Shown here piece by piece: positions 34,017 through 62,687 of a stretch of 64,000 nt of DNA. Positions within the stretch are counted from its first letter, which is position 1; each line of letters opens with the position of its first letter. This stretch comes from Styela clava (lineage: Eukaryota), in the NCBI RefSeq assembly GCF_964204865.1, contig NC_135259.1, forward strand, positions 16,926,001-16,990,000, written 5' to 3'. Under the pieces are notes generated by a model. It searched no databases and was not told where the DNA came from. It worked only from the letters and a program-made list of their open reading frames with translations. Made by a program: the position numbers and the translations under genes.

Positions 34017-34347
34017 GCGGTGTGGCGCATAGTGCTAAGCGTTAGGAATACGCTCGCCACCGCATCTCTGATTACCCTTCGTGGGATCGCAGGTTCGAAT
34101 CCCATGCGGGGATTATCATGTGCGAGAGGATTGCTGAACTCCTCGTCGCCGTAGGGTGGTTCACGTAACCGCTGGTCGGTCACGGCTTCCTCCGTCATCA
34201 AGTCCATGCTTCTGAAAACAAATAACTGACTAACTAATCTCATACCCGACTTGGAATGGTAACCGGACGAGAGGCCGTGGTTTGCCATATGATTAAGCCG
34301 TCTTATCGGCTTTCCTCTCCCCGGGGATAAATATGTAAATCCTATCC
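34017..34347 (+). mobile_element. tRNA-derived SINE, copy A
   Basis: A-box-like tggcgcatagtgctaag, B-box ggttcgaatcc, atcct-repeat tail; high identity to copies B and C. Confidence 0.85.
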
Positions 34348-34999
34348 TAAGTGTGCTCAAGATTTTTATAAAATGAAAACAACAAAATTTGGGGTGAGAG
34401 GGAAATATTGGTACGAAAATGACAAAATGATACCAACTCATAACGACTTCTACCATTTTTTTTAAATACTAATTGTTTGAAAATGATCGTTCGAATAGTT
34501 GTGTCGAAAAACGATCTTTTCAAAAACAACGACAACGTAAACAACTCCAGTCAGAACAAACCAACAGCAAATTTATTTCAAAATATACAATTTGTTTTCC
34601 ACGTGACATCAATGAAGTGTCACAGTTTAGGTTTTGCCACTGTGTAAATAAGTCTGAAGACTCGGGATTCCGGATTGGTTGTTTATGGTACGGCAACTCT
34701 ACACTTGTAACAGAAATAACGACAGTGAACATAACTCAAAAACAGTCGACGACCAGCCTTTTCTGACGAGAAGAGAGCAAAAACTATTTTATCGCACACT
34801 TTGTGTGTGGTCGGAGTCCAGACCCGGCTAAAACTGCCTAAATCAAGGGTCTGGGAAATAGCATAAGGATAGATATAAAAAGATACTAAAACGACAAAAA
34901 TACGGACATTAAAACCTGTGACAGACACCAGAATGAATGTATTTTGTTGGAAAATGATATTTTAGATGGCATATCGTAATGGACCAGCCGATACGTGAG

Positions 35000-42420: not shown

Positions 42421-43826
42421 TTAGCACAACCCCTCGAAATCTGTATCAGAGGATTTTACAAAGTACCTCGCCATTGTATCAGAATAATATTCATCCTCTT
42501 TCGACTTGTTTTCAAAATACTTCTTTGCTTTATAGTAAATGTAGAGAAAAAAGAATGGAAATCTGTCAAAAAAGAATTTCCAGAATTCCTCGATTGTCTG
42601 GTCAAATGAGCCTTCTCCCTTGTCTTCGTGATTATGGGTATGTCTATTACGAATAAATCTGAGAAGTTCAGTCACGGTAAATCCAAACTTTTTTGCTTTT
42701 GTCTTCATAGCATCTTTTTGTACCACAACGGAAACCTTTTTTTCTGTATATCTACTTTGGATTTCGTTCAGTTCATCGTCAGTAAACATCAAGTCTTTTT
42801 CCTCCCATTTCTTTAAGTCTGATTTCACGTTATGTGCATACATGTCATCTGATTGAACGTCATCTAAAAATAAATGGGGAGCATCATTTCCATTTTTCTT
42901 GTCGTCAGAATTTTTCCTTTCATTTATTTTTTTCAAAAGTTCCATTCCTTTCATGACATCTCCATAGAACTCTAGTCTACGCTGATCAGACCAGAAGAAC
43001 GGATGCCCAAGAACTTCGATCATTGTAGGTCGAGTTTTAGGATCTCTTTGTAGCATACTTGCAATCAAATCAATGGCAATGTTGCTGTCTGGGGTTTCAT
43101 AAAGTGTTTGTAACGACATTCCAGTGTCATCTTCAATGTATGCTTGCCAACAATGAGGCCTTTTTCCAAAAGGATGCTTTCCATTCGTGAGTATGTAAAA
43201 CATAACTAAACCTGCTGAAAAAACATCAGCATAAATTGATGTAACCGCTTCATCGCCAGATGTTTCTGGAGCTCGCCAGCCGTCAGTACCAACATTAGGC
43301 CTGCTTGCTAAAGTGTTTGATTTACCATGGTCAAGACGTTTGCTAAGCCCAAAATCTGATATCACAACGATGCCATCTTTATATAAAATATTTTGAGGCT
43401 TTAAATCACGATGAAGAATGTGGCGTCCATGTATATGCCTCAACCCTTCTGCCATTCCCTTTACATCAAACTTTCGTTTTGCATAACTGACAATTCTAGT
43501 TTTGATTTTGTCCCAAACACTCTCAGATTCACACTCTTCCATGGCTATATAGATACATTCCTCATAATCAAAGGTAATATCGTCTGATCCAAAATATGTA
43601 ACAACATTTGGATGTCTACTTGCATTTCTCATGTTGTCCACTTCCCTCTTATACAATGCTATGTCACCCAATATTTGAGATTTTCCTACTATTTTAACTA
43701 CAATGTTTTCATCATTTTCCCCTGCAGCTTTCCGACGAGCTCTAAATACTCTTGACCCTTTTCGGATTTGCTCACATCGCTTGAAAGTTATCTCACCATG
43801 TTCAATCGTAATCACACCAGTTGATT
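42421..43826 (-). CDS. Terminal exon: IRE1-like kinase 2 plus KEN endoribonuclease domain
   Basis: VVK, HPNVVTYF, HRDLKPQNIL, ISDFGLSKRL, GTDGWRAPE, GKHPFG, HPFFWSDQRRLEF, ELLRFIRNRHTH, FFDRFPFFFLYIY. Confidence 0.92.
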
Positions 43827-46800
43827 CTGAATTAAAATGAAAATCTAGATCAGGGGTTTCCAAACCAGGGGTCGCGACCCCAAATTGGGTTGGAGTGATA
43901 AGTAGGTAGGGTCGCAAACAGGTCATGGGGTCGCTGAGGTATGGTAAGAGGATGGATGTACAAAACATCTAAGATTTGACAAACCTTGTTAAATTCAGCA
44001 GTTTGTACCATGGCTTACTGTAAAAGAGGCCCATATGCATCGCTCTATGCTTATGCTATGCTTATGCTATAAGAAATGTAGGTGATTATTGTGATTATTG
44101 TTATTGATTATAGACCACAACATGACCAAACTCAAAAGTGCTGTGAAAGAAGCTCTAATAAAGTTTCATGAAAAATATATATATTAACCTGGAGTCGCAC
44201 TGGACACTTGGAAGTTGTCTTTGGGGTCGTTCTGAAAAAAACTTGGGAACCACTGATCTAGAACCACTCATCTGGGAACCACTGGCGCGGCGGTGTGGCT
44301 CAACGGGCTAAGCGTTAGGAATACGCTCGCCACCGCACCGCAATTACTCTGCGTGGGTTCGCAGGCTCGAATCCCATGCAGGGATGGTTATGTGCGAGAG
44401 GATTGCTGGACTCCTCGCCGTCGTTGGGTGGTTCACGTAACCGCTGGTCGGTTACGGCGTCCTCCACCACCAAGTCCATGCTTCCGAAAACAAACAATAT
44501 AACTAATCCCATACCCGACTTGGTTGGAATGGTAACCGGACGAGAGGCCGTGGTTCGCCATCTGGATAAGCCATCTTATCGGCTTTCCTCTCCCCCGGGA
44601 TAAATGTGTAAATCCTAGATGAATGTACTTGCTGCTGTAATATCCTGAGTGAGCAATGTCACATTCTCGAAGAATTTTTTTTTTTTCAAATCATTAGATG
44701 CCATTGCTTGATAAATAGATTTGGTTTCCTGTGGCTACCCTTCCACAGTGAAATTCAGTGTTCCAATTTTTCTTGTATTTTCATATGCATCACTTTTTAA
44801 TTATTGACAATAAAAAAAAACACTACGATGGAGAGGCTGATACCTATCTATAATGAGAATTTTTAAAAAGAAGTGAAAACATTTTTGTACATCCCAAATT
44901 GTACAAAAGGACGAAAATTTAAATATTGATGTGTGGTGATAAGAAATTTCGGTGCTCCCGAAGTATGCGAACCAAGATGGCGGACATCGGAAGGTAACAT
45001 GGGTAACAGGTTAGGGTTAGGCCATAATTTTTTTCCAATTTTCCTTATTTTAGTCCTATTATCAGTTCGAAGACAAGCCAAGAGCCTCCCGTAGTATTTA
45101 TACCTAAAATTATGGCCTAACCCTAACCTAGTACACATATTACATTCTGATGTCCGCCATCTTGGTTCGCATACTTTGGGAGCCCCAAAATTTCCTTCAG
45201 AACAGCGAACTCATCAAGTTTCACTATTAATTTAGTTCATAAGATTATCCAAAATCTGGATATATAATAATTAATAACCTTCAATCACCAAATATTTATT
45301 GCAATAACAACATATAACTCACCATTAGCAGGGTCAGAATGAGTCGAAGGAGAATCTTTTTCATTACATGACATTGTATTTCTCTGAGACTGTTTTTTTG
45401 CAGAATTGGCATCTACGAAAAAAAGTCAGTGATAAAATTCAGGATGCAAAAGAAATAATTATCACAGGAGGTAATTAAAACGGGAGAACGATGGTCTAGC
45501 AATTGAAGCGTTAAACTCAACTTAGTTGGCATCGTACATTACACCTTACAGGTACAAATTCCACATGACCCAGGGTGCAATAAATTGAGTAGGCAATGTT
45601 AAACTGGAATGCTTTTGGTCCCATTTGATTCTTTAAAAAATATCAGCCTACTTCTTGATATATTGTGAGATAAAACTGGCTATCTGCAAACTGCAAAGTA
45701 CCTTATTCTGAGCGAAAAAGGTGAGAAAGCGTATAAAAAGAAAATACATCTAAATTTTCTGTAAGTTTGACATTCAATCTCAAATAATCTCAGATTAAAA
45801 CAAAGCTTGATACAAATGCTTCATGCGTCCAAGATGGGTCATTTAAAAATTAAGCAATTACAATTTCATCCTAAATTTGAATGACAGGAATGAAGATTCC
45901 GTCAAATAGTCTCAGTGGGATATTGATTGATCCAGGAGTCTAAACATTAATACTTCGACCAACTGTATTCAGTTCGAAGAAATGAATGGCATAAGACTAT
46001 CACCAAAGTATAGCAGACAGTAGCTATTAAATTTAAAATATTGCATAACTTTACAAAAACAAAAATTTGTCTTACCCATGACAGAAATACTCTTCCAGTC
46101 ACTCATTTTTCCATATCCTGCTTTATTGTAAGCCACAATTCTTGCACTGTAATTATGGCCTGTTTTTGGACCATCAATCGTAAATCTACAAGTGCTGGAT
46201 TTTTCATCTATAATTTTTTCCTGCGCAATTCTCCACTGAATTTCATATCCATCAGGTTCAATATCAAGTGGATCCCATTCATAAACAATATTTTTCTTAT
46301 CGTCGAACCTTGTCTTAATGTTACAAACTTTGTCTGGAACTGCAGATAAAAAATAGAATATTCATGAACAAAATGTAATTAAATTGGCAACAGATTCCAT
46401 ATTGGACGTGATCGAGACTTGTAAAATTCTTTAGATTTTCTATTAGTACCATACTTTTAGCATAACATAGGTAAAAATTTATAATACACAAAATTAATAT
46501 TTAAATTTTTATCAATGAATTTTAAACTCACAGGTACTAACATAACCGTCAGTCAATGCCTCTTTACTACATGTTTCTCCAACTAAAGCCTTTATTTTAA
46601 TTTTATATGATTCCCCAGGTGTTAGATTTTTCAGTGTGGCATAATGCTCATCTGTTTTCATGCGTGTTACTTCTTCAGAATTCCTCAGAGGTTCCGCTAA
46701 AACTTCATAAGTTTTCTTAATATTTGAGTGATCTTCAAATTCCACACATAGCCCATTTATTTCTTTCTTTGGCAAAACTCTGATATTGTGTGGTGCATAT

Positions 46801-49800
46801 GGTTCTGAAAATATAAAGTCTAGATTAGATCAAGGGAGGCCATAGACAATAATCGCAAGATAATAATCAGCCAGTGAATTGTCACCCATTGCACAGTGTC
46901 TCACTCATGACTGGTTGACTACTCCCATAATTGTACCTGGGTTGGAAACCGGTTGGGAGGCAAAAACAAGATTAAGCCTTGCAGAAAATATGTGTGAAAT
47001 GTCTGATGCTTTTATTCAGCCTATTATACCATGATATGCTGTGGGTCGGTTGGCAAGACAAGAATGTTGGGCATGGTTCACCCAAACTGGGGTCCGGGGA
47101 TCCCTGGGGGTCTGTGATGACTGCACAGGGGGGTCGCAACAATATGAAAAGATTTGATTATGTTTAGTATTTGATTTGCAGTAAAAAAGCCATTGCATCT
47201 CTCGGGTTTAGCGTTGCGGTGAATATCCACTGCTGTCAGATTTCAAAATTGTATTGCTTTTTGCAACGATCTACATCTGTGACTGTGTGAGGAAGCATTA
47301 TCGGCTACCAATACGACAAAATACAGGTCAATCTTGCCGTAGTGCCAACTTACAAACTCGCTTGGCACAAATTGCTCCAAAAATTGATGTTGTGGAGTGA
47401 AAAGCAATCTCATCCATCACAATAATGTTGTTTAATTATCCTTCCTCAATGGTTAGGCCCAGTAATTTATGCGGCATAGAATGAGGGTCTGTCAAAGATA
47501 AGATCCACAAACAGGGGTTCGCAACCCAAAAAATTTGGGAAACTCTTTATCAGGCGATAGGAATAAACTCTGATCATCCTGTGTAGGTTTTCAGACTCAA
47601 ATCCCTTGGAAGACAAGTATGTGCGAAGATTACTGGATTGTGTGGTTCATGTTACAGTTTCCTCCTCCATCAAATCTACAAATCTGGATTATCTCCATAT
47701 AACTGGCTAACTAATCCCATATCTAACATAGATCATCAACAACATATCTAGTCTTGAAATACAAAAATCACCAAATGGGCAAAATATAAAGTATGCGAGA
47801 GTCTGATCTAACTTACTCATTATCATTTGCTTTGTATTGTGATTCAGGTCAAAGACGGAGTTGTAGCCACAATACTGTCTGATTGTATATGTGTTCCCTG
47901 GAACGCCACTTTTGAAGACAAAGTTGTTATTTGTTGGAAAATATTCACTGACAAAGCCATTCTGATTATTTTCAATCTGAAGTTTGAAACAATCAACACC
48001 AGTTGGTTTTTCCCAAGTCATATATGCACATTTAGAAGGATTAGTATCATCAGGGATAATTGCGAAAAATGATGATTTCATTCCACCTACAAAATAAAAT
48101 ATACATTAAAAAATAGGAATTTTGATAAAAAGGTTGCATTTGTTAATTTTTTAAGTTTCAACTTTTCCAGCTGGAGCCTATTAAACATTATATTATCAGT
48201 TCATTTTGTTAGGCCACACACATCAAGCTACACCCTTTATAAGTAATACTTTCTTTCGTAGTTCTTTAAAATTAGGTGAATTTGAATGATATAGATCTTT
48301 TATAACAGACCCTAATTTTATTTCATATAAAACCATAGTTTTGACAGGATTGGGTCAAAAATCCAGTCTTCTTATTTCACCAGATTTCTGCCTCATTTTT
48401 ACTGAAAAATCGTTATTACAGTTCTTCAACTAGTTCTATTTATCTTATATTACAATAATTATCTCCTTAATGTATTATATTTTTTTCACAATACCTATAT
48501 TATAATACTTGTTTTATGACAGTACTGAGGCAGAAATAGCATATTAGAAGCATGTTAAAATCAAGTAGAATTTTCATTGATACACCAAGATCCTAATTTG
48601 TCTTAATTTTAGAACTAACTTGAAATTGAAAAATCGCGTGTGGCAAAAAAGTTTTCAATCATTAGATGTTTTATGTAAAATTGGTTTATTTGCTAATGAA
48701 AATAAGACAAATAAAAGGATATAGTTGGCAGTTAAATACAGACATATCACTCGTACTAGTTTATGGCAACATTTATATTTGAAATTTTATCAACTTTTCT
48801 TTCCTGATAATTCAAGTTTTAAAAAAGTACGGGGAATATTGAATATTATTACTTCGTTAAAAACACTTCCGTACCTATTCGGTAGTATTTGGATGTAGCA
48901 GTTTTTCCAGTTCCACCTGCGTTGAAAGCAGCGACACTGCAGTGAAGCATCGTTCCAGGCTCTAATCTTTCTCCAAAGCTAAAATTTGTTCTGTTTGTTT
49001 CATCTGTTTTAATAACTGACTCTCCTTTGTACAATGCGATCCTGTATCCATCTGGCTTCGCTTCCAATGGCTTCCAGTTTATTTCAAAAAATTTCACAGG
49101 ATGTTGATATTGATCTTCTATCAATTCTACTTTTAATGGTGCTGAAAATAAAATTAATCAAATGATGTAAACCGAAACAAATTAGGATTTAAAATAATTT
49201 CAAAATATTGAAGTGATGTAATAAAGTCTAAATGACATTATTCAAAAATAAGTAAGTTTTCAAAGGACAACATGATGTTTCTTTAGTTGGGATTAAAAAT
49301 AAATAACAGGTCCAGGATCAAAAAACAAATATCCCCATAACTATCCTTTAGGAATTTGATTAGAAATAAAAAAACAGTAAAAACTAGAGCAGTGGTTCCC
49401 AACCTGGGGGTCGCGATCCCCGGCGGGTTTCTAGGGGGTCGCGAGGGTCTTGCAAAACAGTAGAAAATATTAATAATAACTTTAGGTTAAATATTGTCAA
49501 TAGAACGCGAAGAAGTCTGGAATGAACTCTCGTCTTCCTCCGAGAGATATCCACTAGCTTCGCGAGACCCCAGAATATTGCTTCTTGCTTGAAAAACAAA
49601 AAAGACGCGCAAGAAGTTTATGGCATGTTAACCATTGTGACGTCACACAAACTCATCTACATTTCGGCGCTCCGAAATGCGGAAAACACACAGGCCTCTA
49701 AGCAATGCTGTTGAACGCCTTTATTTCGATCCCACGCGGTTTACTGCAGGGTAGGCTTGTAGTTTATGTTGTTTCATTATCATACATCCTGCAGTAACGT

Positions 49801-52800
49801 TATAATTACGTTATTTTATTTACCATGACTAAGAAGCGACAATATTAAAATGAAGTTATGAAATATGTAAGCGGCTTTTCAGCTCTTCCTCATATAAAAA
49901 CAAGGGCACGAAATCAAATGAAAGCCGAGGATGATATGAGATTAGCTTTGTCAAAAACTAAACCACGAATTACGCAGTTGGCTACGCGGTTTCAATGCCA
50001 ACCGTCACATTCAGTAAAACTGCAGGTTGATGAAAAATCAAATTACACAATATTCACTTTGCCAAGTGCAGATTCAAGTATTTTGTGGCGTCCGAAGCTG
50101 CCATAAAACCGTGGTGGGATCTCCAAACCATGGCCGCTATAGCGAAACCCATGGCGACCGACTTTTTAACTGCCACAAACCAATGGCGAGATGCCGTTAC
50201 CACAGCAGCAAATTGAAAACCAAAGGCGGGTGAAATTTTGCTGCCGTAACCACAGCATGTCGGCTGTAACAGCAGGGCTGCCCCTGATGGAGATGAATAT
50301 TGGGTAAGTTGGAACATTTTTCTAATGGATACAGTTTTGGTGGATTTGGGATTAGGTCTGTCAGTATAAATAATTCCGCATGATAAACTAAAATCTGGTA
50401 CACGACTTTGTGAATATACCGGTAGTAGCGTCGTAACCACGGCAAGAGCTGCCATTGGTTTGTTCGTGGCAGGAGCTGCCATGAATTGGTACGAACTGCG
50501 CCTCCACTTTGCCGCTAATTTTATTGATAAGTATAGAAAGCGAGGCAGGGGTCGCGAGGCATGTGTAAACTACCAAAGGGGGTCGCAAGCCAAAAAAGGT
50601 TGGGAACCCTTGCACTAGAGCAATAAGTGCAATGTGCAAAACTTTACCTAGGATGACATCACAATGATGTGACCATTCTCCTCTAATATTGCAACGAATG
50701 CTTCGAACCATCACCATATATTTGCTTCCAGGATATCGACATATATACTCGCAATTTGTTGCAGAAGATTTTAATATATTTTCGGTTGTTTTTTTATCAG
50801 CACAATAAATCTGAACTTCATATTCTTCACATCTTTGTTGAGGTATCCACGATATATGTATGGCAGAACTTGAATTTTCTTCATCCATAACAACTCTTGG
50901 AGTTGCAGTTTTTGCTGGCCCTATTTGAAAAAATGTATATGTCGTTATTACTTTCTTTACAAAGACAAACTATATACTCTCCTATGAAGTTAAATGTTCA
51001 TTTGCCATAATAAGTACATTATGAACTACAGAGGATTTTCATTGTGCTAAACATTCAGAAAACCCCTGTCCTCCTTTAGTTGATAATTGGTCATGTCTGG
51101 TACTATAAACTTTATACCATAAAGCTTCATACACTATCCAAGCCCTTAAATGTAGAACGAATAACTGGTTAACTCTTGCTATACCCAAACTGGATAAGCA
51201 ACTAAATGGGCGGACCTGATATGTTTTTTGACATAAGATTTCCAAGATAAAAAAAAATTCTATCATGGTGAAAATGATATATGAAACAAATATTCCAAGA
51301 ATACTCAATTGAAAGAGCAGTGTTTATTACCTTTTTGAAAGTTCATCAATTACAACAATTTTTATGTAGATGAATTTAGCCAGACATATTACGATATGTT
51401 TGTATTTAACACAGTATTTTGTAATAGTTTTAGTGAGAATAGTACAGGGCCGTTGAAGTATATGAAAGATGGCCAAAATATCTGATAAATCATAGGCGGA
51501 TGCAACAATATTCTTAGGAGCATCTGAGGCGGTTAAGAGCATCGGGAGACAAAGAGATAATGTAAAAGTAATTGAAATGACGTATAAGTGCCGATATTGA
51601 TTGCTAATTTCAGTCAAGGTATGTAAATACCAGAATATTGTATAAAGGTCAAATTCAATTTATATGAAGCTATGCAATTGTTACATATATGTGAAAATGC
51701 AAAAAATATCACATCTCACTAATATTAAACTGAGTACAAGATTTATTCTTTGCTTCAAATCAAAGTGCTGAATATAATTTCAATGATTAGAAAAATCAAC
51801 TACTTAAAGCACTTCAAGATAGTGTTAATTACAGCATTGAACAAAAAGTTTAATTACATATTTAAGTAATAATTTTTTTAAATGTCAAACATGATAATAA
51901 AATTGCGGATGGTCAAATTACTCACTTGATATAACAGTTTCAGAAATGGAAGCTTTCCCTCTCACTTTTCCTGAATTTTCACCCCACATTATAAAGTGAT
52001 ATTTTTCTGCAGGTACTTTCGGATTGAATTTAATCTCGACCACCTTTTTATCTGTGTTACTATGACCTTCAAGTGGGTGACCCTCCAATAACCCATTGCA
52101 ATATGCCTGCACAAAATAGAACGGGCAATCCCTTTCAGCAATACCACATTGGACCATAATGTAATTTCCTTTTTCTTCCAAACTCGCAGTGATATTCTGT
52201 AATTTAGATGGTGCTGCAATAAAAAAGTTATTATATTATTAGGAATGTTATATCGCTACAAGATTTTAGACTTATATACGCTATATCAGTGGTCGGCAAC
52301 CTTTTTCAAGTGACGGACCGGTAAAGCTTGACCAAGTTTTTGGCGGACCCCCATTATACAAACGAACTAAGCCTATGCAATAAATTATACGCATTAGGAA
52401 ACTGTTCCCATATTCGAGATTTGGTCGACATTGACACACGTAACGTGTTTCTTACTTCCAGCCTATTTCAATATTTTGTTTTTGTAGTTATCAATATTGA
52501 AAACTAGGCCTCATTAAGATTTCGGGAAAGTTACCAATGCCTGTATCGTTTTGTTGGGGATATCTTAGTCGGGCTGATGAGAGACATTTTTATACGGGCG
52601 TAGAAAAACAATTGACCCAGCATTATTGCGACATACTGACATGGCAATTGTTTATGAAATCAGACATGTTGCTCAACAGTGTTATGCATTGGTCGGCAAA
52701 CTTCATGTACTTGCGGGCCAAATATAAACATTTCTGGTAGCGTGCGGGCCGCAATATTTCCGCCTTCGAACAATCGCTACCATAATTAAACTTCAAATTA

Positions 52801-55800
52801 TGACGCATTTGCATATTGCATTGCTACCCTTCTAATGCTGTGTTGAAAACCTGTCCAAATGAGATGTATATGTGGCATTTTTTTTATTATCAAACGATAC
52901 ATTATTTTTATGTACTTAATATCAATGTGAAAGATGATATTTTTATGGCAAATCGTCGTCTAAATGATGATGTGACAAGCGAGTACGAAATTTCATCTAA
53001 GAGTAATGCATTTTAGATAAAGCTGCTCGAGGCCTTATGTTCTTCCCAAAGTGCACATTACACAATTTGCACTGTCGCACAGATGAGCTGAGGCGCAGTA
53101 CCGGGTCTCGGGGTCGAATTTTCGACGACTCGCTTCGTAACGAGTTCAACATCAAAACCCTAAACAGCTGCGATGCTGACTGGGCATATCGAGCAAACCG
53201 GTTTGGAATGTGCAAGAAAGAAAAATATTTTTCCATTCAAGCGCTTTGGAATGTTCGACCCGCGTCGCTCTGTTTTCCAGACATTTTCAAGTTTTAGAAA
53301 TCAAAATGAACTCGAACGACATACAACTGACGCTACTTGTTACATAGGAAGCGCCGTACAGCAGCACTTGTCACCACATATAACCGTGTAGAGACAATAA
53401 TAAATTTGAGATTAACTTTTGTTTTATTTATTAAATGTCGGGTCGTTCAAGGGCCGCAACAAATTAGCTCGCGGGCAGAATTTTTTCCGACCCCTGGTGT
53501 TGTGTTTGTCTGGTTTACTGTTGGGTGCTGTTTTTTAGTCGTAGGGTTTGTGATTAGATTGTAGAATTGTAGAGGTTTTATTACGGCATTGTCCCTTTTT
53601 GTTGCACCTCTCTGCGGACCGGCAGTAACCTTTCCGCGGACCGGCGATGGGCCGCGGCCCGGTGGTTGCCGACCACTGTGCTATATAATATACTAATATA
53701 ATATATGTTATGTTATTAGGCCCAGTGCAACAAATGCACAGTCTGGCCACATATCTATTACGATATTTTGTAGAGCAGTATTTTTTAGGAAACTTAGGTA
53801 TACTAAGCAATTCAAGAGTCCTGCAGTGCTGCTTGTCCAAGAGAGTATGGCTTTGGTCGGACAAATTGTTACAAAATACATTTGTGTTATTGCGCAGTAG
53901 GACTCTTGAATTGCATAGTATAGTCGTATTTATTGTTGCTACAGTATCCTTGCATTTTTCGCATGCGGATCCACTACCATAACGACATAGAGCAGGGGTG
54001 GGCAAATTACGGCCCACGGGCGGGATCCGGCCCACCGGAATGTTTCATTCGGCCCACTTGTGATTGCTGAAATTATGACTATAGATTTTATAAATAGAAA
54101 TTTCCGTTAAAAATATCGATGATGTAAATTGAAATTCCATTGAAAATACCGATAACGGATCGTCGGCTAAAGTAAATACGATAATTCCTCACATATTATA
54201 AGCACCTAAATATTATGTGCCAACTCATTCAACAACTCTAGCTCCTGATATATCAGCGTTTGTGCCTGTAAATTTTTTGTGAAATCTAAAAAACCTTTTT
54301 TTCCAGTTTTGAGCTTTTCAATCTCAATTTCCATTTTCCTCTTTTCTTCTTGCATCCACTTCATTTCCTTTTCGTGCTCTCTCCGCATTCTCTCAACATC
54401 CCTCTTTTCTTGTTCATTTTCCAATTTTATCTGCTTTATTCTTTCTTCAAACTCTTCTTTGACTTTTACAACTTCCTTCTCTGGAGCGCTTCGTACTACA
54501 GAACCTAAAAGTAATGGTTTCATTTAGACAGAATAATAAAAACCACAGAGCAAAATTATTTGAATAAACGAAGCAAAAGTGTTTCTGAATGTTATATAAA
54601 GCAAAAATCTTGGGTATTATCACAATATGTCAGGTATGATTTAAGCTAGGCTTTGGGAAAAATATGAAATCTAGATTTTATTAAATGATAATTTCATACA
54701 AAAGTCTTGCAATAAACTTTGTTTCTGACAGAGTTCAAGATTTTTTACCAAGGTGGAATATACAGTGTTCAACCAATTATCCAGATTTTTGATTAAAGAA
54801 ATATTTCGTTAAAAACTATAGAACCTTTCTACTTACCCAGTTTGGGATGAGGGCAAACAAGTTGGCCACGAAAGTATTTATGTTTCCGAATTTGTTCTGT
54901 ATCAGGACGATCCTGTGGTTTCAATGCGAGCATCCAACCAACCAAATCCTCCAGATCCCCTTCTAGTTTGCTCAGGTCACATCCTTGATATCGTTTTATA
55001 TTGAAATTCCAACTATCAGGGTCATTACCGAATGGGTGGGAACCATCGGTCGAAATGAAATGGATTACGAGTGCGGAAGAAAATATGTCCGAATGTTTAG
55101 AACAATAGTCAGAAAGGTATATTTCCGGGGCCCTCCAACCATCAGTGCCAACACGTAGAGTGCTCATTTTGGTTACAAAATGTCCTTTTCTTAACTGTTT
55201 TCCCAAACCAAAGTCAATTATTTTGAGAATTCTCCCATTGTCCGATACCAAGATATTATCTGGTTTGAGGTCACGATGCAGAACTTCATTCATGTGAATA
55301 TGATCGACAGCTTCAACAAATTGTTCTATTTGTTTATGTTTGACTTCGTCAGTCTTAAGCTTTGGATCGTCTTTGACAAAGTCTGTCAAGGTTTTAGATT
55401 TAAAGTATTCCATTGCGATGAATAAATATTCTGTCGGACCAAAGAAATAAGTCCCAGATTGGAGGACAGTTATCACATTTGGGTGGGAACGAAGCTTTCG
55501 GATGATTTCCACTTCTTTCCTATTTTCATCGCTGAGTTTGATAGATTTTATGGCGATTAAATCGAATCCTCGAGAACCTTTATGAGTCTGCAAGCCCCTG
55601 TAAACTTCGCCATACTTTGCTAGTCTTTCATTATAAAGCAGGAACAGGTTATGATCGACGCGAATTGAATCTGTAAAACATAAAATAGTAGGTCTTTGGT
55701 AGATAATTTGATATGTGTGTGAAACACAAATATAGAACACATATTTACAAATCTAGTATATTTGTACATCTAATCCAGGGGTCCGCAACTACGGGGTCGC

Positions 55801-58800
55801 AACCCAAATTTCGCTCTGGGTCGCGAAACAATTTAAATTTTTCATAAATATGGGCATCGCGTCTGTGTAGCGTATTTATGTATAACAACTTTATAAATCT
55901 CTGATTATAATTATGGATGTTTCCTCGAATATACACTTTCTTATTTACTGCCGTAACATTGGTCAATCAGCATAAGTGCAAAATTGAAGTAACAATAAAC
56001 GTTTCAGAAGCGCTCAGATACTTTTGCCATTGGTTGTGTATATTATCTCGTTTTGGCGGTTTTCGGGTGTTGTTTGTTAGTTTTTGGTTGTTTTGGTAAA
56101 TATAAGTCCTAATCAAATATTTCAATAATCATTTTGCTCTGTCGAAGTTTTATTTTAAATGAAGTAATAAAAAATTAATCTAGAAGTAGCTGTGATAGAC
56201 TAGGCCAAACTTTTCTACCGGCACATTTAAATGAAAGGTTGTTGAATGTATTGAATTAAAATGATAGTTTGAAACATATAAACCGGTTTATAGGCGCGAA
56301 CTCGCAAAACCAATATTGAAATAAGAACCAATAATTTTGCAATGGTAGAGTATAAAGCGGAATAATTTTGTCGAGATCGAAAATCGGGAAAACATTCATT
56401 ACGCAGATGTTTGCATTGTTAATTGGTATTATCCTACTACGTAGGTGGACAATTGTATTGTTTAGTAGCAATGCAAGGTTAGCAGTAGTCTTGTGGAATT
56501 GCTTGATAAAGACAGATGATGAGATTTGTCCATTCTAAATTAAATAGTTAGGTTTCTGTTACATTTGTTATTGTAAGATATTCTTGCTTGAATTCAAAAT
56601 TTAGTGGGGTTGAGGATTTTGAAGGTAGTTTTAGTCACAAATAATGTTGACAAACTGGTTACTGATGAATACTGAAGTAAAAGTCGCGAGCGGAAGATAC
56701 AACGGAGAAATTAAGTGAGAACAGAACACCGCATGCACCTTCAGAAATCTTTGCGTCTTCAAGCAGTGGGGATCAATGCCCGACAAAAGACTTATCTCCT
56801 CACCCTCATCGGATAGAAATACATCACTCAAACCATTCTTATAAGCGGAAGTACAGTGTAGAATTTATAAAGCTTGGTTTCACGTGTATTCTTATAAATG
56901 ATGAGTCACGTCCTCAATGTGTTGTTTGTTCCGGTGTTCTTGCCAACGAGAGCCTGAAAGCAGTGAGATTGAAACGACATCTCACAGCAAAGCCTCCAGA
57001 ATTCATTGACAAACTAATACATTTTTCCACCGATCAGAAAAAGAATTTTTAGGCGAAAAGAAAACAATGACAAAATATATCACAATTTTAGAATATCTCA
57101 AAAGATATTGTATGAAGTGGCTTATTTAATCGCAAAAGATAAAAAACCACACACCATTGGAGAAACACTGATCAAATCTATTGCAATTAGTCAAATTATA
57201 ACTGGAGACAAGGTAACTAAGGATATGAAAGAAATACCAATGTCTGTAGATACCATTCGCCCGACGTATCAGCGGAATGGAATGGGTCAATATATTAGGT
57301 GCCAACTGATTGATAGAGTCAAAGAAGGAAAATACCCTTTGCAATTGGATGAATCCACGGATACGTCTAGTTTAGCGCAGTTGATTGTGTTCGTTAGGTA
57401 TATAGCCAATGGGAAGCTTGAAGAGGTACTCATGTGCGTGACGCTTTCTGGAACATGCACTGGTCAAGACATATTCTCAGCAGTGGCGACGAGACTACAG
57501 AATGATGGATTATCTTGGGAGCGGTGTATTAGCATTTGTACTAATAGGGCTGGGGCCATGGCGGGAAAACAAAGGTTTTTTAGCAAGAGTATTACAAATT
57601 GGGCCTCATATCAATTTTACGCATTGCATTCTTAATAGGGAAAATCTGGCTAGCAAAACATTGGACCAATAATTAGAATTGAAGATTGCATATGATGGCA
57701 AAAGAAGTTTGGCTGAATTTTGGATTTCAGTAGCAAAAGAATATCCGGAATTAACAGCTGCTGCAATGAACGTATTGCTGCCATTCGAAACTACCTACTT
57801 ATGTGAAAAGATTTTTCCTGCGTTTTCATACATAAAAAACAAATACAGATTAAGGCTAAATTAAAAGAAGATCTTCGAGTTGCTGTCTCCCAAATTAAAC
57901 CACGAATTGATAAGTTGTGTTGAAAACGCAAAGCTAATAATTCGCATTAGTCATAATGAAAGCTATTATTCACGAATTTATGTGATGAGTTTCATATAAT
58001 TTTGTGCAAGAAAATTGCTAGTGTCAATAATAGTCTTAAAATCATAACTAATTACATGTTTATCAAATGCTTGGGTCGCGAGAAATTAAAAAAAAAAATT
58101 TATGGTCGCGCTAAAAAGCAGTTGCGGACCCCTGATCCAATCCACTGCTTGTCTAACGACTCATTTAGCGAAAATAACCTTGAGAAGGTAAATCATATCC
58201 ATATCAGCTATTAAGGATGGGCAATGCAGAATAATTTGCTATTCTAGAACAGTGCTCCGCAACCGGTGTGCCGCGAGACGATGCCTCTACTAAGGTAAAG
58301 TTAACCTGCTTTTACGTTGGCTTGAGCAACACCAATTCAAATTCATGAATCCCCCACTGTGCATTTGTGACGTAACAAGTGGTAGGCCTATATGTCAAGC
58401 TGATATATTGTAAAAAAAACACTTAACTTTTACGAAACAAATGGATCCGAAATCCTTTCTCAACTAGAGCTGAAATGTCAGGGAAAGACTTACCCCTGCG
58501 TATTCGAGAAAACTTCTTTGAAGTAAGAAATGACAGAACGCTAAGATTGAAATTCAGCGAAATTCCACTTGATGTGTTTTGGATTTCAATAAAAGAAGAA
58601 TATTGGCACATTTCCAATGCAGCTATTGAAATATTGTTCCAGTTTTGCACAACTTACGTGCGAACGAAGCTTTTCCTCTTTATACTAATCAAAAACGATA
58701 AAGGATCCTGCATAAAAGATGTTGACAACGAACTTCGAGTTGCTCTTTCACATATTGATCCTAATATAGAGCGATTGTGCTCATTAAAACAACCACAAAT

Positions 58801-61800
58801 CTCTCATTGAAATATGAACATAAAACAAAGTTACTTTGTTTTTTTTCGTTTGTTCTGGTGTGCCGTCGAATTTGGCAAGTTTTATAAGTGTGCCGCAAAT
58901 TAAAAAAGGTTGCGAAGCACTTTTCTAGAATATTCTAGAATAGTTCAATCGAATCCAGAATACCGAATCCTATTCTCTTTTCATACTTATTCAAATAGTG
59001 GGAATTTTCCTGATTGCTGGATTTAGATGTCAAAAAATTATAAATGTATTACTATAAATGTATCATTTATTTGGAAATGTCCTCAACATTGGATTTGATT
59101 TAATACTAAACTTTGATACTAAACAGGCATTTCCCAGGACAATAAAATCTAAGAATATTACAATATTTTTGCTTTCAATTGTTCCAAATGTATGTAATCT
59201 CTAAATACTGATATGCTATATTAAGACACGCTTCAAACACTTTAATAGTAAGCGGTTAAATACAAAAATAGATATGAAACGGCATTAAATCATTATTAAT
59301 GTTAGAGTGCCGAGGGTACTAAAACACGCACGCTGAGAATTAGATGCAGGACCAGCGTGTGGCCACTGCAACCTATGCGACCAGTGTAAAATATTAAATT
59401 TAACCACTATCAATTAAGATCAACTCTTTATTCTGTACGATCAAGACGTGCAAAACAAGGTTCCAGTAAACGCGATTTCGTAGTTAGTTATTAGTTAATA
59501 TCATCTAAAGACGAATTCATTTAGTATTATTATCAATACATATCATTATCTACCCAGACTTGGTCCTACTCAAACTCAATATGTAACTATTTTCGCCAGA
59601 TGTGGCATCTTTTTTTAAATTCATCGGCAAATAAAATTACTACAGACACTCGATCAAACGTGCGTCTATCTTGAACGATAGAAACGGACCAAAAGATAAT
59701 CTTTTGAGAGTGAAATTTAAATGCGACAGATCGTCGTGTTTTGCGATATAACTTTGTATTTCGGAAACTGGTGTAATAAAAGTAATAAAATTATTCCTAA
59801 ATAATATTTGATATAAATTAATCGCAAGTAATGTCATAACATTTCATGCCTGGATTTTGGTTTACATGCATCATTTTCTGGGGAAAACTCACCGGTCGCG
59901 GAAAATCATTTACAGTAATGTAAAATGAAGCAAGGCACGCCTGTAAATAATTGAAGATTGTTGCAATCAGATTATCGGAATATCGCCAGTAAGTCGGCAC
60001 AAATAATTATTATTATTAAACCCTAGCTAGATAGCAAAGCAGGAAAACGCAAAAAATGATGCAATAGCGAGTCTTCGTCCTAAGGTGTACTTCACGAATA
60101 CGTCGATTCAGATTACAGTGTTTGATGTTTACCGATTAGGCAAGTTTGATTAAACGAGAGAAATCTCCATGCGAGAAAGAACGCTCGTCTTTAATTGATA
60201 AATTAGAAACCTGAAATACAAAAATTGATGCACGCCGAAAAAGCAAAAATGGTGCAACAACGAGTCTTCGCCATGAGATGTACTTCGCCGACTTCCTGTC
60301 CAGAATAAGCCGATTGAGATTACAGTGTTTGAAGTTAACCGATTTTACGGGTCCTTTCCGAGCAGACGCAAGTCTATTTAAACGAGAGAGATTTCCACGC
60401 GAGAAAAACGCTAGTCTTTAATTGATATTTAGAAAACCGAAATGCAAAAATCGACGCATGGCGCTGGAGAGGCCGAAACCGAATCCTGTTGGATTCGGAT
60501 ACTTTGGGATTCGCATCCTCCGGATTCGGTATTCTATATTGCCCATCCCTATCAGCTATATAAAAAACAATGTATAAAAGACAAAACGAGAATATCGGTT
60601 GGAAACCGAAGACTTATCGATCGATAGTTAGGGGATCCCCCAAAACAGAAACTGCAGTTTCGATTCATCCGCTCTTGTAACTTGCGCACTGCGCATCGCA
60701 CACACACACTCGGCGGGTTTCAAAATTCTCTCGCTTTACAAAAATCTAGATCACTATATCAATAATTGATTGATAACTCGCTAATTATACGACATAATTC
60801 GCCCAAAATCAATAGGCTTCTGGTCCGAGATAAGATGAATGCACATGCAAAATCTGGAGCAGATTCAATCTCGCTTTCGTGAGATATCGCGTGCATCTAA
60901 CAGACACACACACAGACAGACATACATACAGACAAAGACCTATCAATATACTTACCGATCTTAAGATCGATAAGTAATAATTACAATTTATCATTTAGTG
61001 TGGGTAGCACCTGCGAAGGCTGCGATTCATGCTTTTGTAGTGCCGGGCAAATTGCGTCATCCAGTGCAGTGCACTCTACTTCCCAATTACTGTAAATATG
61101 AAGACAATTAGAATACAATTTGCTTTTAAATTTATTGCGGTGATCGCCATTCCTTTCATATCGGCAGTAATTTATTTTCCCTTGTCGCGCCGCAATGGAC
61201 TGTCTTAGATTACGATAATACATGAAATATAATAATCGAAAAATGTTTTCAATTAAAACGTAGATGGAGGGGGGCGCTAAGATGCGTGGGCGATATTCGA
61301 TATTAATATACTCACTAAAAATGATATTCTGAAGGTAGGGAATAACGATATTGAATATTAAATCAAATTGAACATCCCTGGCTGTGATAGGTGCATTTGC
61401 CCCTATACGATTTGTAGGGTTGGCCCTTATGCAAGGATACACGGTAACTACGTTGGCATTGACTTGAACAGAGCCATGCTTGAAATAAAATGTTTCAAAA
61501 ACACTGTAAAATAAAAACTTAGCTTACCTTCGAAATGAAATGGTATTTCTCCTTTTGTTTCATTTTCTGCTGCATCATTAGACTTTGTTGCCTTTTTCTT
61601 AGTTGTTGAAGGTTTTTCATATGTATTGCTGCTTCGATCAATCGTAAAACCAGAACTTCCAGCAATACTGGTTTCTATATTGTCCCCTGTTGAGATAAAG
61701 CACAATAGTCAGAATGGTATTTATTATTCATAGTTATAGTTAAAAAGTGAAGCTGAAACATGCCATTATTGTACAAGAAAAATTAACTGTCCCGATCCCA

Positions 61801-62687
61801 AGTATTACTACCCTGTGGTAAACTCAAAGTAAATTTATTTATATGAATCAAAAATGCTATAAAAAGCCGATCTTGCCGACCCCCTAAGAGCGGCCCTAAA
61901 CAGTGAATTTATAAAAATTCGCGCATAAGCTGACCCTAACAAATCGGAACACTTATCATCATCACACATACTTTTGACACAGCTAATTTTTATTATAAGT
62001 TATGATTGGTGATCCTCAGCGCCAGTTTAATTTAGTTCATCGACATCGTAAGCTAAGTTCCGCCACAATTATACCTCAGCACAGGTATTAAGTGTTGTGC
62101 TACCACTGGAATTAAATTAAATTTTGCTCATGAAACTATGCGTTATTTCAAAAAACGCAAATGTTATAACGATCATCGTTACAAAAATTCACTCCATTTT
62201 CATAAGAGAGAGAATGCATTATAAGTTGGAATAGATGTATGAAATTGTAACCTAATTGTAAAGAAAATTTATTTAAACCACAATATAATTTCATTTATTT
62301 ACCTCGAATAAGTTAAAAATGTGATTTATGTAATACTGACAAAAACAAACATTTTCCTTTATAGGCTATATGAATAAACTAGATCCAATAATTGACCTTT
62401 CGGAGAACAGAACAAAACGACAATCTCTGGCAGAACTTATTCTCACCTTCATTAATGGTTTGCTTGAAAACGAATGTTGGAGCTACCACAGTTTCAAGTT
62501 TTTCTGAATGCTCTATGAGATTTTGAAGAAAATTTCTACCAAATTCTTGTACCGTCCCAGGCATAGATGACAACGATACTTGTAATGCATTTCGAACTGA
62601 AGTTTGATCGTTTGCATATGAAAATTCTGTAGATTCATCTGAGGAATCGGCAGAATCGATTTCTCGTATTTTACCAGATTCAGCCAT
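42421..62687 (-). CDS. Tandem IRE1/RNase L-like kinase with coiled coil, 6 FN3 domains and C-terminal KEN RNase (~1524 aa); exons 62687-62447, 61686-61528, 55670-54837, 54504-54295, 52213-51926, 50920-50648, 49141-48875, 48086-47817, 46804-46532, 46339-46076, 45412-45323, 43826-42421
   Basis: 12 AG/GT-bounded exons, all introns phase 1, 4575 nt open to TAA, in-frame stop just upstream of the ATG. The donor after 54295 (GTTTTT) is the weakest junction. Confidence 0.8.
43851..44255. mobile_element. hAT (Buster-type) MITE just upstream of the terminal-exon acceptor
   Basis: caggggtttccaaac...ttgggaaccactg; TSD atctagat/atctagaa. Confidence 0.8.
44284..44617 (+). mobile_element. tRNA-derived SINE, copy C
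   Basis: Same family as 34017 and 35659. Confidence 0.85.
44951..45186. mobile_element. Palindromic MITE with internal TTAGGG motifs
   Basis: TIR ggtgctcccgaagtatgcgaaccaagatggcggacatc; TSD gaaatttc/aaaatttc. Confidence 0.85.
46076..52213 (-). CDS. Six single-exon fibronectin type III domains of the kinase-KEN gene
   Basis: Six 264-288-nt phase-1/1 exons, each opening with xP or similar; B-strand W in four (ISW, INW, MTW, YEW); PG/TG-x-x-Y motifs (YPGSKY, VPGNTY, LTPGESY, KTGHNY); A(F/Y)N..G.G ends. Confidence 0.85.
49390..50612 (+). mobile_element. Internally deleted hAT (Buster/Charlie) element
   Basis: TIR cagtggttcccaacc/ggttgggaacccttg; TSD aactagag/cactagag; transposase C-terminus GFSALPHIKTRARNQMKAEDDMRLALS...QPSH. 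Confidence 0.85.
52287..53678. mobile_element. Non-autonomous hAT element containing a nested hAT at 52687-53496
   Basis: Outer TIR cagtggtcggcaacc/ggttgccgaccactg, TSD cgctatat/tgctatat; inner TSD gtgttatg/gtgttgtg. Confidence 0.8.
54837..55670 (-). CDS. Exon 3: IRE1-like kinase 1 (no KEN domain)
   Basis: IAIK, KEVE, HPNVI, HRDLKPDNIL, IIDFGLGK, GTDGWRAPE, DIFS, GSHPFG, RP...HKYF. Confidence 0.92.
55776..58134 (+). mobile_element. Decayed hAT Buster/Charlie transposon (ZBED8/SCAND3-like transposase pseudogene)
   Basis: TIR caggggtccgcaac/gttgcggacccctg; TSD atctaatc/atccaatc; fragments PQCVVC...LANES, KPHTIGE, QLDESTD, TTYLCE with frameshifts. Confidence 0.9.
58212..60551. mobile_element. 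Non-autonomous hAT-type element hosting a nested insertion
   Basis: TIR taaggatgggcaat/attgcccatcccta; perfect TSD tcagctat; internal ~200-bp tandem duplication at ~60040-60455. Confidence 0.85.
58250..58922 (+). mobile_element. Nested Buster-type hAT deletion derivative
   Basis: TIR cagtgctccgcaacc/ggttgcgaagcact; TSD ttctagaa; ORF 58475-58810 is a transposase C-terminus (FWISIKEEY...LRVALS...QISH). Confidence 0.85.
60584..60978. mobile_element. HINE/DINE-like element
   Basis: acttatcgatc...gatcgataagt subterminal IR and cagacacacacacagacagac microsatellite; second copy at 24865. Confidence 0.5.

What the first reader, a model, noticed from the sequence alone, without database searches (positions are those of the whole stretch)
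42421..62687. Cytosolic kinase - coiled coil - 6xFN3 - kinase - KEN ribonuclease: candidate new RNase L/IRE1-type effector
Seen: 12 exons splice in one frame into ~1524 aa with two IRE1-family kinases, six FN3 repeats between them and a terminal KEN domain; no signal peptide, luminal domain, TM helix or ankyrins. Established: the well-known animal kinase-KEN proteins are IRE1 (ER-luminal sensor plus TM) and RNase L (ankyrin 2-5A sensor, described from vertebrates), both activated by dimerisation. Inference: this is a third architecture, a soluble regulated RNase with an FN3 array as sensor or spacer, plausibly an innate-immune or stress effector. I do not recognise this domain order from any named protein.
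Basis: partly seen in the sequence, partly recalled or inferred. Interest (0 to 1): 0.92.

Follow-up and report, generated by a model that had tools for sequence, protein, structure and literature searches.

The report
Sea squirt mosaic kinase-ribonuclease gene
A sea-squirt (Styela clava) gene does encode a soluble 1,524-residue protein with two IRE1-like kinases, six FN3 repeats and an IRE1/RNase L-type ribonuclease domain, but it is an already annotated (unnamed) exon-shuffled member of a large unstudied gene family, not a stand-alone new class.

Summary
Twelve minus-strand exons, with 11 GT-AG phase-1 introns, give 1524 aa. Every exon translation matches RefSeq XP_077973364.1 (Styela clava LOC144428262, "uncharacterized protein").

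RNA contigs from two to four runs (three studies) show the CC>FNa, FNa>FNb and FNb>FNc splices at the predicted bases. The K1>CC splice is not shown for this locus: the only junction-like reads carry a paralog's diagnostic base.

Both kinases are IRE1-like. The K2-KEN model superposes on IRE1 kinase-RNase structures. KEN keeps R-N-x3-H but has Phe where the catalytic Tyr should be. There is no signal peptide, TM helix or ankyrin repeat. A separate canonical IRE1 exists.

The gene is a mosaic of three sources:
- The head (promoter, N-terminus, K1, coiled coil) is 91-95% identical to 14 tandem kinase-CC-Deltex-C genes on another chromosome. Homology stops 14 nt after the CC donor.
- The six FN3 exons are colinear with part of a giant FN3-array gene 0.6 Mb away.
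- K2-KEN belongs to an expansion of at least 30 KEN loci.

A second S. clava gene and several cnidarian genes have similar multi-kinase-KEN layouts, so this is a new variant of a known kind. RNase activity and an immune role are inferred, not shown. First-stage notes elsewhere in this genome flagged relatives.

The parts
62447..62687 (-). Exon 1: start codon and the acidic, Ser-rich N-terminus (residues 1-80 plus a split codon)
   Evidence: exact match to P0122 1-80. About 80% identical to the N-termini of the kinase-CC-DTC paralogs. DNA homology to a chromosome C5 paralog covers 63227-62374, so it includes the upstream region.
61528..61686 (-). Exon 2: the rest of the N-terminal region with no recognised domain (residues 82-133)
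   Evidence: 87-89% nt identity to C5 paralogs. No Pfam domain.
54837..55670 (-). Exon 3: kinase K1, IRE1-like. Lys, HRD, DFG and APE are kept; the Gly-rich loop is degenerate
   Evidence: Pfam Pkinase 3.9e-43. Best PDB relatives are IRE1 at 4e-24. 91-95% identical to 14 tandem copies at C5:2.65-4.43 Mb. dN/dS 0.21 against them. Nested in the kinase-CC-DTC clade.
54295..54504 (-). Exon 4: E/K/R-rich helix of about 70 aa with 3-4 hydrophobic spacing (coiled coil inferred)
   Evidence: An RNA contig covers 54304-54506 at 98%. The joint 54295>52213 appears in runs X2 and X6. Homology to C5 paralogs ends at 54281.
51926..52213 (-). Exon 5: FN3 repeat a
   Evidence: No Pfam hit, but the AF2 model has 7 strands at pLDDT 79.9, and Foldseek hits FN3 domains at TM 0.72-0.79. 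87.5% identical (nt and aa) to an exon of the giant FN3 gene at C13:17562798-17563157.
50648..50920 (-). Exon 6: FN3 repeat b
   Evidence: Pfam fn3 is weak at 0.0014. Member of the repeat profile. RNA joints on both sides.
48875..49141 (-). Exon 7: FN3 repeat c
   Evidence: Pfam fn3 6.7e-07. RNA joint 50648>49141 in all 4 runs. Contigs leave the genome at the donor 48875 and run on for 274-391 nt.
47817..48086 (-). Exon 8: FN3 repeat d
   Evidence: 55% identical to the first FN3 of the older RefSeq model P0121.
46532..46804 (-). Exon 9: FN3 repeat e
   Evidence: Pfam fn3 5.5e-06.
46076..46339 (-). Exon 10: FN3 repeat f
   Evidence: Pfam fn3 best stretch at 953-1019 of P0122.
45323..45412 (-). 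Exon 11: 30-aa polar linker
42988..43826 (-). Terminal exon, first part: kinase K2, IRE1-like. Beta3 Lys, aC Glu, HRD, Asn, DFG and APE are kept
   Evidence: Pfam 6e-42. PDB IRE1 5e-40. Conserved columns. Single copy in the genome; the next best match is 39%.
42421..42987 (-). Terminal exon, second part: KEN (HEPN-type) ribonuclease domain and stop codon. Arg 42651-42649, Asn 42648-42646, His 42636-42634. Phe 42687-42685 and Lys 42690-42688 sit where the family Tyr lies
   Evidence: Ribonuc_2-5A 35 bits. AF2 pLDDT 84.8, and Foldseek aligns about 460 columns to IRE1 kinase-RNase at TM 0.78-0.83. Column counts: R 66/66, N 66/66, H 65/66, Y 63/66, with Lys here. RNase L aligns its Tyr to the Phe.
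57108..58810 (+). hAT-type transposon remnants inside intron 2. This intron is 5.8 kb here and about 0.65 kb in the C5 paralogs
   Evidence: Dimer_Tnp_hAT 20.6 bits, just under the cutoff. Intron sizes.

Best explanation
This is one real, expressed Styela clava gene (LOC144428262). It encodes a cytosolic 1524-aa protein: N-terminal region, IRE1-like kinase K1, charged coiled coil, six FN3 domains, linker, IRE1-like kinase K2, KEN ribonuclease.

Shown: the exon model, the domains, the splices CC>FNa>FNb>FNc, and a mosaic origin.
- The head (upstream region, N-terminus, K1, CC) is a copy of the 5' half of the kinase-CC-Deltex-C gene family on chromosome C5, with the breakpoint 14 nt after the CC donor.
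- The FN3 cassette is colinear with six consecutive exons of a giant FN3-array gene 0.6 Mb away.
- K2-KEN is one of at least 30 single-exon kinase-KEN units of a lineage-specific expansion that branches apart from canonical IRE1.

Inferred: the K2-KEN unit works like IRE1 and RNase L. It binds nucleotide, pairs back to back, and the paired KEN domains cut RNA through the retained Arg/Asn/His site. Cutting is probably slower because the Tyr hydroxyl is missing.

Also inferred: the shared head is the input module. It would self-associate through the coiled coil and K1, possibly with trans-phosphorylation, and so bring two tails together. The FN3 array would serve as a spacer or binding surface.

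The family's size, tandem turnover and swapping of heads with DTX3L-like tails fit a stress or innate-immune effector. That role is a guess.
For: Gene model and identity. Domains. Fold of K2-KEN. Splice joints at the predicted bases in RNA contigs of 2-4 runs from 3 studies, with empty intron bins. Expression of the 3' half: the same runs hold 0.36 of the words of 42421-48100. Head origin: N-terminus 80-83%, K1 94% and CC up to 88% identical to P0046, P0064, P0065 and P0120, which carry PF18102. There are 14 copies on C5. Continuous DNA homology 55777-54281 at 91.6% then stops. K1 dN/dS is 0.21 at dS 0.15. FN3 origin: six colinear exons, FNa 87.5%. Family context: 42 KEN matches. Tree split 97/92 from canonical IRE1, with K1 and K2 in different subclades. 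Canonical IRE1 with a PQQ-like lumenal domain lies elsewhere. Catalytic residues. Y1043F costs about tenfold and H1061N at least 3e5-fold in yeast Ire1 (PMC3149027). KEN is 92% conserved against P0121 while the FN3 repeats are 43-68%.
Against: No read or contig specific to this locus crosses K1>CC. The loose ends at 54504 carry A where this locus has G (54837), as the C5 paralogs do. No transcript-derived protein with this K1 was found. The KEN Pfam score is low (35 bits against 138 for the canonical IRE1) and the catalytic Tyr is absent. The Gly-rich loops of both kinases are degenerate. The homodimer prediction gave no verdict. No data bear on RNase activity, substrate, trigger or induction.
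Confidence: 0.55

Rival explanations
1. The main product lacks K1. Transcription would start in or after the K1-CC intron, and the protein would be CC-FN3x6-K2-KEN or shorter. The duplicated head would then be a passenger.
For: There is no locus-specific K1>CC junction; the junction-like loose ends come from paralogs. An in-frame ATG at 54523 lies just upstream of the CC acceptor. The older RefSeq relative P0121 is modelled without a head. No K1-bearing transcript fragment was found.
Against: The GTAAG donor and the TTTTAG acceptor are intact and identical in position to the paralogs that do splice K1>CC. The upstream region, E1 and E2 were copied as well. K1 is under purifying selection. The RefSeq model includes the head.
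Confidence: 0.15
2. The KEN domain is catalytically dead or nearly so. The protein would act as a kinase scaffold or RNA-binding pseudo-nuclease, not as an RNase.
For: Tyr, conserved in 63 of 66 relatives, is Lys/Phe here. The Pfam score is weak and covers only profile positions 40-122. There is a low-confidence insertion of about 60 aa between KEN helix 1 and the core.
Against: Arg, Asn and His are kept. Y1043F in yeast Ire1 loses only about tenfold. KEN is the best conserved part against P0121, at 92%. The whole kinase-KEN model superposes on IRE1.
Confidence: 0.18
3. It is a young, selectively neutral chimera with no function of its own, transcribed only because it inherited a promoter.
For: It is single copy, built from recent duplicates, and has introns swollen by transposons. 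This exact gene was not found in the older annotation. RNA contigs show a 39-nt net deletion variant and 3.5% differences.
Against: A 4.6-kb ORF over 12 exons is intact, with all splice sites. K1 dN/dS is 0.21, with about 0.26 on this branch by subtraction. Catalytic motifs are kept in both kinases.
Confidence: 0.1
4. Assembly or annotation artefact: a false join of C5-type and C13 sequence.
For: The head is very similar to C5 genes.
Against: K1 differs from every C5 copy by 5-9%. The CC>FNa splice is seen in two independent studies, and FNa is unique to this locus.
Confidence: 0.02

Closest known systems
IRE1 (ERN1/ERN2, yeast Ire1p)
   Same: Both kinases have IRE1 as their best solved relative (5e-40 and 4e-24). 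KEN directly follows K2. The whole K2-KEN model superposes on IRE1 kinase-RNase at TM about 0.8. The Arg/Asn/His of the RNase site are kept.
   Different: No signal peptide, lumenal sensor or TM helix. It has a second kinase, a coiled coil and six FN3 repeats. The catalytic Tyr is missing. It branches outside the canonical IRE1 clade (97/92). The genome has its own canonical IRE1.
RNase L
   Same: Soluble kinase-fold plus KEN. The KEN segment alone scores marginally best against RNase L (E 0.0046, against 0.01 for IRE1). The alignment is ungapped, and the aromatic residue lies 12 residues before the Arg, as RNase L's Tyr does.
   Different: No ankyrin 2-5A sensor. K2 keeps the phosphotransfer motifs rather than being an evident pseudokinase. 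Overall sequence is far closer to IRE1: RNase L is absent from the best 60. Clade membership was not tested.
Styela clava kinase-CC-Deltex-C (DTX3L-like) paralogs on C5 (e.g. P0046, P0064, P0065)
   Same: N-terminus, K1 and CC are 80-95% identical, with the same exon structure and shared upstream DNA.
   Different: Their tail is a Deltex C-terminal domain (PF18102). Here the tail is FN3x6-K2-KEN, and no DTC remnant is found in the window.
Styela clava LOC120326396 (P0125, 1315 aa)
   Same: The same order in outline: K1-type kinase fold, FN3 repeats, K2-type kinase, KEN-like tail that keeps R-N-x3-H.
   Different: Its first kinase is a pseudokinase (HRD and DFG lost). It has two FN3 repeats and a 350-aa unique middle. 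Its KEN is below the Pfam cutoff (16.7 bits). It is only 43% identical in K1 and about 30% in K2, and lies on another chromosome.
Cnidarian multi-kinase KEN proteins (Xenia LOC124449044 and LOC124438737, Exaiptasia LOC110245978)
   Same: Soluble proteins with two IRE1-type kinases and KEN, plus repeat domains.
   Different: Their two kinases are sister duplicates within each gene. Here K1 and K2 come from different subfamilies. Their repeats are TPR, LRR or ankyrin, not FN3.
PK+RNase homologs surveyed in PMC10400998, and the KEN family in the HEPN survey PMC3710099
   Same: Kinase-KEN proteins that are neither IRE1 nor RNase L are on record in many eukaryotes. An expansion of KEN in a tunicate (Oikopleura, KEN alone) is noted.
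   Different: Neither main text mentions FN3, two-kinase layouts or Styela. The supplements could not be read.

Membership tests
IRE1 | Signal peptide and ER-lumenal sensor domain | tested here: not met
   No Pfam domain in residues 1-133, and a hydrophilic N-terminus. The genome's canonical IRE1 shows a PQQ-like propeller.
IRE1 | Single transmembrane helix before the kinase | tested here: not met
   The best 19-residue hydropathy window is 1.66 and lies in the kinase aF helix.
IRE1 | Ser/Thr kinase of the IRE1 type with catalytic residues | tested here: met
IRE1 | KEN domain fused to the kinase C-lobe, with Arg, Asn and His of the RNase site | tested here: met
IRE1 | Catalytic Tyr (yeast Y1043) of the RNase site | tested here: not met
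   Lys at the family's Tyr column and Phe one residue later.
IRE1 | Placement inside the canonical IRE1 clade | tested here: not met
   Separated by a branch with 97/92 support.
RNase L | N-terminal ankyrin repeats that bind 2-5A | tested here: not met
   No Ank hit in P0122.
RNase L | Kinase fold that is a pseudokinase | tested here: not met
   K2 keeps Lys, Glu, HRD, Asn and DFG. Activity itself was not assayed.
RNase L | Membership of the RNase L clade of jawed vertebrates (PMC10400998) | not tested
   No RNase L sequence could be brought into a tree. The KEN-only phmmer result slightly favours RNase L, which is inconclusive.
KEN / HEPN superfamily | R-x4-6-H motif with a polar residue after the Arg | tested here: met
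   R-N-R-H-T-H at 42651-42634. Motif definition from PMC3710099.
Styela kinase-CC-DTC family | Shared N-terminus, K1 and coiled-coil head | tested here: met
Styela kinase-CC-DTC family | Deltex C-terminal domain tail | tested here: not met
   tblastn of the DTC tails finds nothing in the window.
Fibronectin type III | Seven-strand beta sandwich with the FN3 sequence profile, in all six repeats | tested here: met
   Profile of the six repeats hits FN3 at 4.6e-19. Three repeats are above the Pfam cutoff. The weakest was modelled and matched FN3 structures. FNb and FNd rest on the alignment only.

The most novel reading that the evidence does not exclude
The tunicate expansion of soluble kinase-KEN genes, this gene included, is the surviving sister of the pre-ankyrin kinase-RNase stock from which vertebrate RNase L arose. 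Styela wires these RNases, and DTX3L-like tails, to interchangeable kinase-coiled-coil heads as a modular cytosolic immune system.
Probability: 0.15. Interest if true: 0.8.

Novelty: new variant of a known kind. Interest (0 to 1): 0.5.

Why it matters
Kinase-KEN ribonucleases are studied almost entirely through IRE1 and RNase L. This gene is a dated example of how new members are built. Phase-1 exons from three unrelated genes were joined into one frame, and the transcript is spliced as predicted. It also shows that a chordate close to vertebrates holds dozens of soluble kinase-KEN genes. The same kinase-coiled-coil head is attached here to an RNase and, in 14 paralogs, to a DTX3L-like tail. 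If the head is a signal-receiving module, that gives a natural experiment on how one input can drive two outputs. The family is also a candidate outgroup for the origin of RNase L.

Tried and rejected
- Complex prediction on two copies of K2-KEN gave no verdict (score 0.01). It is not evidence either way.
- I first read the loose ends at 54504 as the K1>CC splice. I withdrew that because the diagnostic base is the paralogs' A, not this locus's G.
- A search for transcript-derived proteins carrying this K1 found only annotated paralogs.
- Pfam gave nothing for FNa and FNd; this was resolved by the repeat profile and the FNa model.
- No Deltex-C remnant is present in the window.
- Intragenic duplication as the source of the two kinases is rejected: they are 35% identical and fall in different subclades.
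- P0121 as a simple allele is rejected. Its FN3 exons match the giant FN3 gene at 17.56 and 17.86 Mb better than the window, while its K2-KEN matches only the window, at 83%. Its true locus is unresolved.
- Literature searches for Styela with IRE1, for tunicate KEN expansions and for FN3-KEN layouts found no description.
- I did not build or send a joined spliced protein. Exons were searched one by one by reference, and whole-protein steps used the database protein P0122 that a search returned.
- The N run near 38105-38250 was left alone.
Full report
**Observation.** The region holds a minus-strand gene of 12 exons. I read every boundary from the sequence.
- E1 62687-62447
- E2 61686-61528
- K1 55670-54837
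- CC 54504-54295
- FNa 52213-51926
- FNb 50920-50648
- FNc 49141-48875
- FNd 48086-47817
- FNe 46804-46532
- FNf 46339-46076
- linker 45412-45323
- terminal exon 43826-42424, with the stop at 42423-42421

All 11 introns are GT-AG and phase 1, and the exons sum to 4572 nt, or 1524 aa. Because all introns share one phase, in-frame joining is weak evidence on its own for a single gene. The independent evidence below matters more.

**Identity.** A search of protein representatives returned P0122, 1524 aa. This is RefSeq XP_077973364.1, "uncharacterized protein LOC144428262 [Styela clava]", on a 22,500,630-base contig. That is the length of the window's own contig, C13. Taken exon by exon, each in-frame translation is an exact substring of P0122, and the 11 residues between the pieces equal the split codons I derived. 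Exons were searched by reference, and whole-protein steps used P0122.

**RNA.** Nine runs guessed to be RNA hold 0.12-0.36 of the words of 42421-48100, which fits exon-only coverage. I laid four runs from three studies on 48750-54749.
- Joints with CT..AC ends (GT..AG on the gene strand) lie exactly at 54295>52213 (runs X2, X6), 51926>50920 (X1, X2, X6) and 50648>49141 (all four).
- Intron bins without repeats are empty.
- Contigs leave the genome at the FNc donor (48873-48875) and run on for 274-391 letters. That is the length expected for FNd plus part of FNe.

FNa has no paralog among the fetched proteins, so the CC>FNa joint belongs to this locus. The K1>CC junction is a different matter. 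The loose ends at 54504 match the 3' end of K1 but carry A where this locus has G at 54837. The C5 paralogs have that A, and one has an identical start to its CC exon. Those reads therefore come from paralogs. Inclusion of K1, E1 and E2 rests on four things: intact and conserved splice sites, the copied upstream region, purifying selection, and the RefSeq model. It does not rest on reads. A protein search for transcript fragments with this K1 found none.

**Domains.**
- Pfam finds Pkinase twice, fn3, and Ribonuc_2-5A at 35 bits against a cutoff of 23.3.
- Both kinases have IRE1 as their best solved relative, K2 at 5e-40 and K1 at 4e-24.
- K2 keeps the beta3 Lys, the aC Glu, HRD, Asn, DFG and APE. 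K1 keeps Lys, HRD, DFG and APE. Both Gly-rich loops are degenerate.
- An AlphaFold model of K2-KEN has pLDDT 84.8 and pTM 0.86. It aligns over about 460 columns to IRE1 kinase-RNase structures at target-normalised TM 0.78-0.83.
- In an alignment of 66 kinase-KEN proteins, the KEN Arg and Asn are invariant, and His is present in 65. All three are present here (R-N-R-H-T-H, 42651-42634).
- The Tyr found in 63 of 66 is Lys here, with Phe one residue later. In the HMMER alignment to RNase L, its Tyr pairs with that Phe.
- In yeast Ire1, Y1043F costs about tenfold and H1061N at least 3e5-fold (PMC3149027). A slower but not dead RNase is therefore the reasonable expectation.
- The six repeat exons align with the FN3 pattern, and their profile hits titin and fibronectin FN3 at 4.6e-19. 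The least typical repeat, FNa, models as a seven-strand sandwich that matches FN3 structures.
- No TM helix, signal peptide or ankyrin repeat is found.

**Origin.** The protein is a mosaic of three sources.
1. *The head.* Residues 1-481 (N-terminus, K1, CC) are 80-95% identical to the heads of a family whose tails are Deltex C-terminal domains, one of which NCBI names DTX3L-like. The genome holds 14 such K1 exons, 91-95% identical, in a tandem cluster at C5:2.65-4.43 Mb, and only this one elsewhere. DNA homology covers the upstream region and E1 (63227-62374), E2, and then runs unbroken from 55777 to 54281 at 91.6%. It stops 14 nt after the CC donor. K1 shows dN/dS 0.21 at dS 0.15 against the C5 copies, compared with 0.09-0.14 among those copies.
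2. *The FN3 cassette.* The six FN3 exons are colinear with six consecutive exons of a gene at C13:17.556-17.576 Mb that has about 25 or more FN3-like exon-sized open frames. FNa and 65 nt of its upstream intron are 87.5% identical to that gene; FNb and FNd are 69-73% identical.
3. *The tail.* K2-KEN is a single-exon unit like those of many other loci, and it is single copy here.

In the kinase tree, K1 sits inside the kinase-CC-DTC clade. K2 sits with P0121 and three unnamed relatives. Both lie in a clade separated (97/92) from canonical IRE1 and from cnidarian multi-kinase proteins.

**Family context.**
- The genome has 42 matches to the KEN model, representing at least 30 loci.
- It has at least 66 IRE1-like kinase exons at E <= 1e-40.
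- One KEN match, at 144 bits, belongs to a single 1261-aa ORF with a PQQ-like lumenal domain, a kinase and a full KEN. This is the canonical IRE1.
- Another S. clava gene, P0125, repeats the outline of this one: a pseudokinase of K1 type, two FN3 repeats, a K2-type kinase, and a weak KEN with R-N-x3-H.
- Cnidarian proteins combine LRR, TPR or ankyrin repeats with two kinases and KEN.

**Mechanism.** What follows is inferred from established knowledge of IRE1 and RNase L. In both, nucleotide binding and back-to-back pairing of the kinase folds bring two KEN domains together and switch on cleavage.
- K2-KEN has what that mechanism needs, apart from the Tyr hydroxyl.
- The head is shared with 14 genes that carry a different output domain, which suggests it is the input or assembly module. 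Its coiled coil would hold two chains in parallel.
- K1 could pair, or phosphorylate K2.
- The FN3 array would then be a spacer or binding surface inherited by exon shuffling.

I put about 0.85 on the gene and its architecture being real. I put 0.55 on the whole statement, including dimer-activated RNase function, and less on an immune role.

**Comparison and novelty.** The gene fails the defining features of IRE1 (lumenal sensor, TM helix, clade) and of RNase L (ankyrin repeats). It meets those of the KEN/HEPN family. The HEPN survey notes KEN expansions in Oikopleura and monocots (PMC3710099). A 2023 study sorts kinase+RNase homologs into ten clades and derives RNase L from such a protein (PMC10400998). 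Neither main text mentions FN3, two kinases or Styela. I class the gene as a new variant of a known kind: annotated but undescribed.

**Limits.**
- The complex prediction gave no verdict.
- No RNase L sequence could be brought into a tree.

Noticed in passing
L007+L008 (G000:C13:17556000-17575999), + strand: A gene with about 25 or more FN3-like exon-sized open frames on the + strand in 20 kb. It contains the colinear counterparts of FNa-FNf. A second, inverted set of matching exons lies near C13:17.865-17.868 Mb.
   Followed up: partly
G000:C5:2.65-4.43 Mb (L001-L005): Tandem cluster of 14 kinase-coiled coil-Deltex-C genes with K1 exons 91-95% identical to the window's. dN/dS among the copies is 0.09-0.14.
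   Followed up: partly
G000:C3:5.775-5.914 Mb: Six tandem units, each with two short KEN-model hits (profile positions 4-81 and 73-127) in open frames of 66-112 aa. This may be an array of split or stand-alone KEN genes.
   Followed up: no
L006:639-4424 (G000:C5:11456638-11460423), minus strand: The canonical IRE1 (PQQ-like lumenal domain, kinase, KEN at 138 bits) is a single uninterrupted 1261-aa ORF. It appears to be intronless.
   Followed up: partly
window 49049-49093: One RNA contig (run X6) replaces 43 nt of the FNc exon with 4 letters, a net in-frame loss of 39 nt, without GT-AG ends. This is probably an allele. A run-X2 contig over FNa differs at 10 of 289 positions.
   Followed up: no
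older RefSeq model P0121 (XP_039262258.1, 863 aa): Its FN3 part matches the giant FN3 gene (82-89%) better than the window. Its K2-KEN matches only the window (83%), and no separate locus exists in this assembly. It may be a divergent haplotype, a missing paralog or a chimeric model.
   Followed up: partly
window 54505-54523: An ATG at 54523 in the K1-CC intron is in frame with the CC exon. It could start a K1-less product if transcription began in that intron.
   Followed up: no
window 57108-58810 (+) and 11885-12283 (+): hAT-type transposase remnants (dimerisation-domain hits just below the Pfam cutoff). The first lies in intron 2 of the gene.
   Followed up: partly
window 44283-44617, 33977-34456: Copies of a short interspersed repeat. 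Copies up to 90% identical also lie in the C5 loci, and RNA depth is high over several intron repeats (49950-50550, 52290-52800, 53550-53750).
   Followed up: no
window 971-1348 (+), 14389-18229 (-), 24213-24692 (-): Exons of neighbouring genes: a weak C-type lectin hit, a DUF4200 coiled-coil gene, and a synaphin/complexin-like exon.
   Followed up: no
window about 38105-38250: A run of N (assembly gap or masked stretch). It was left untouched.
   Followed up: no
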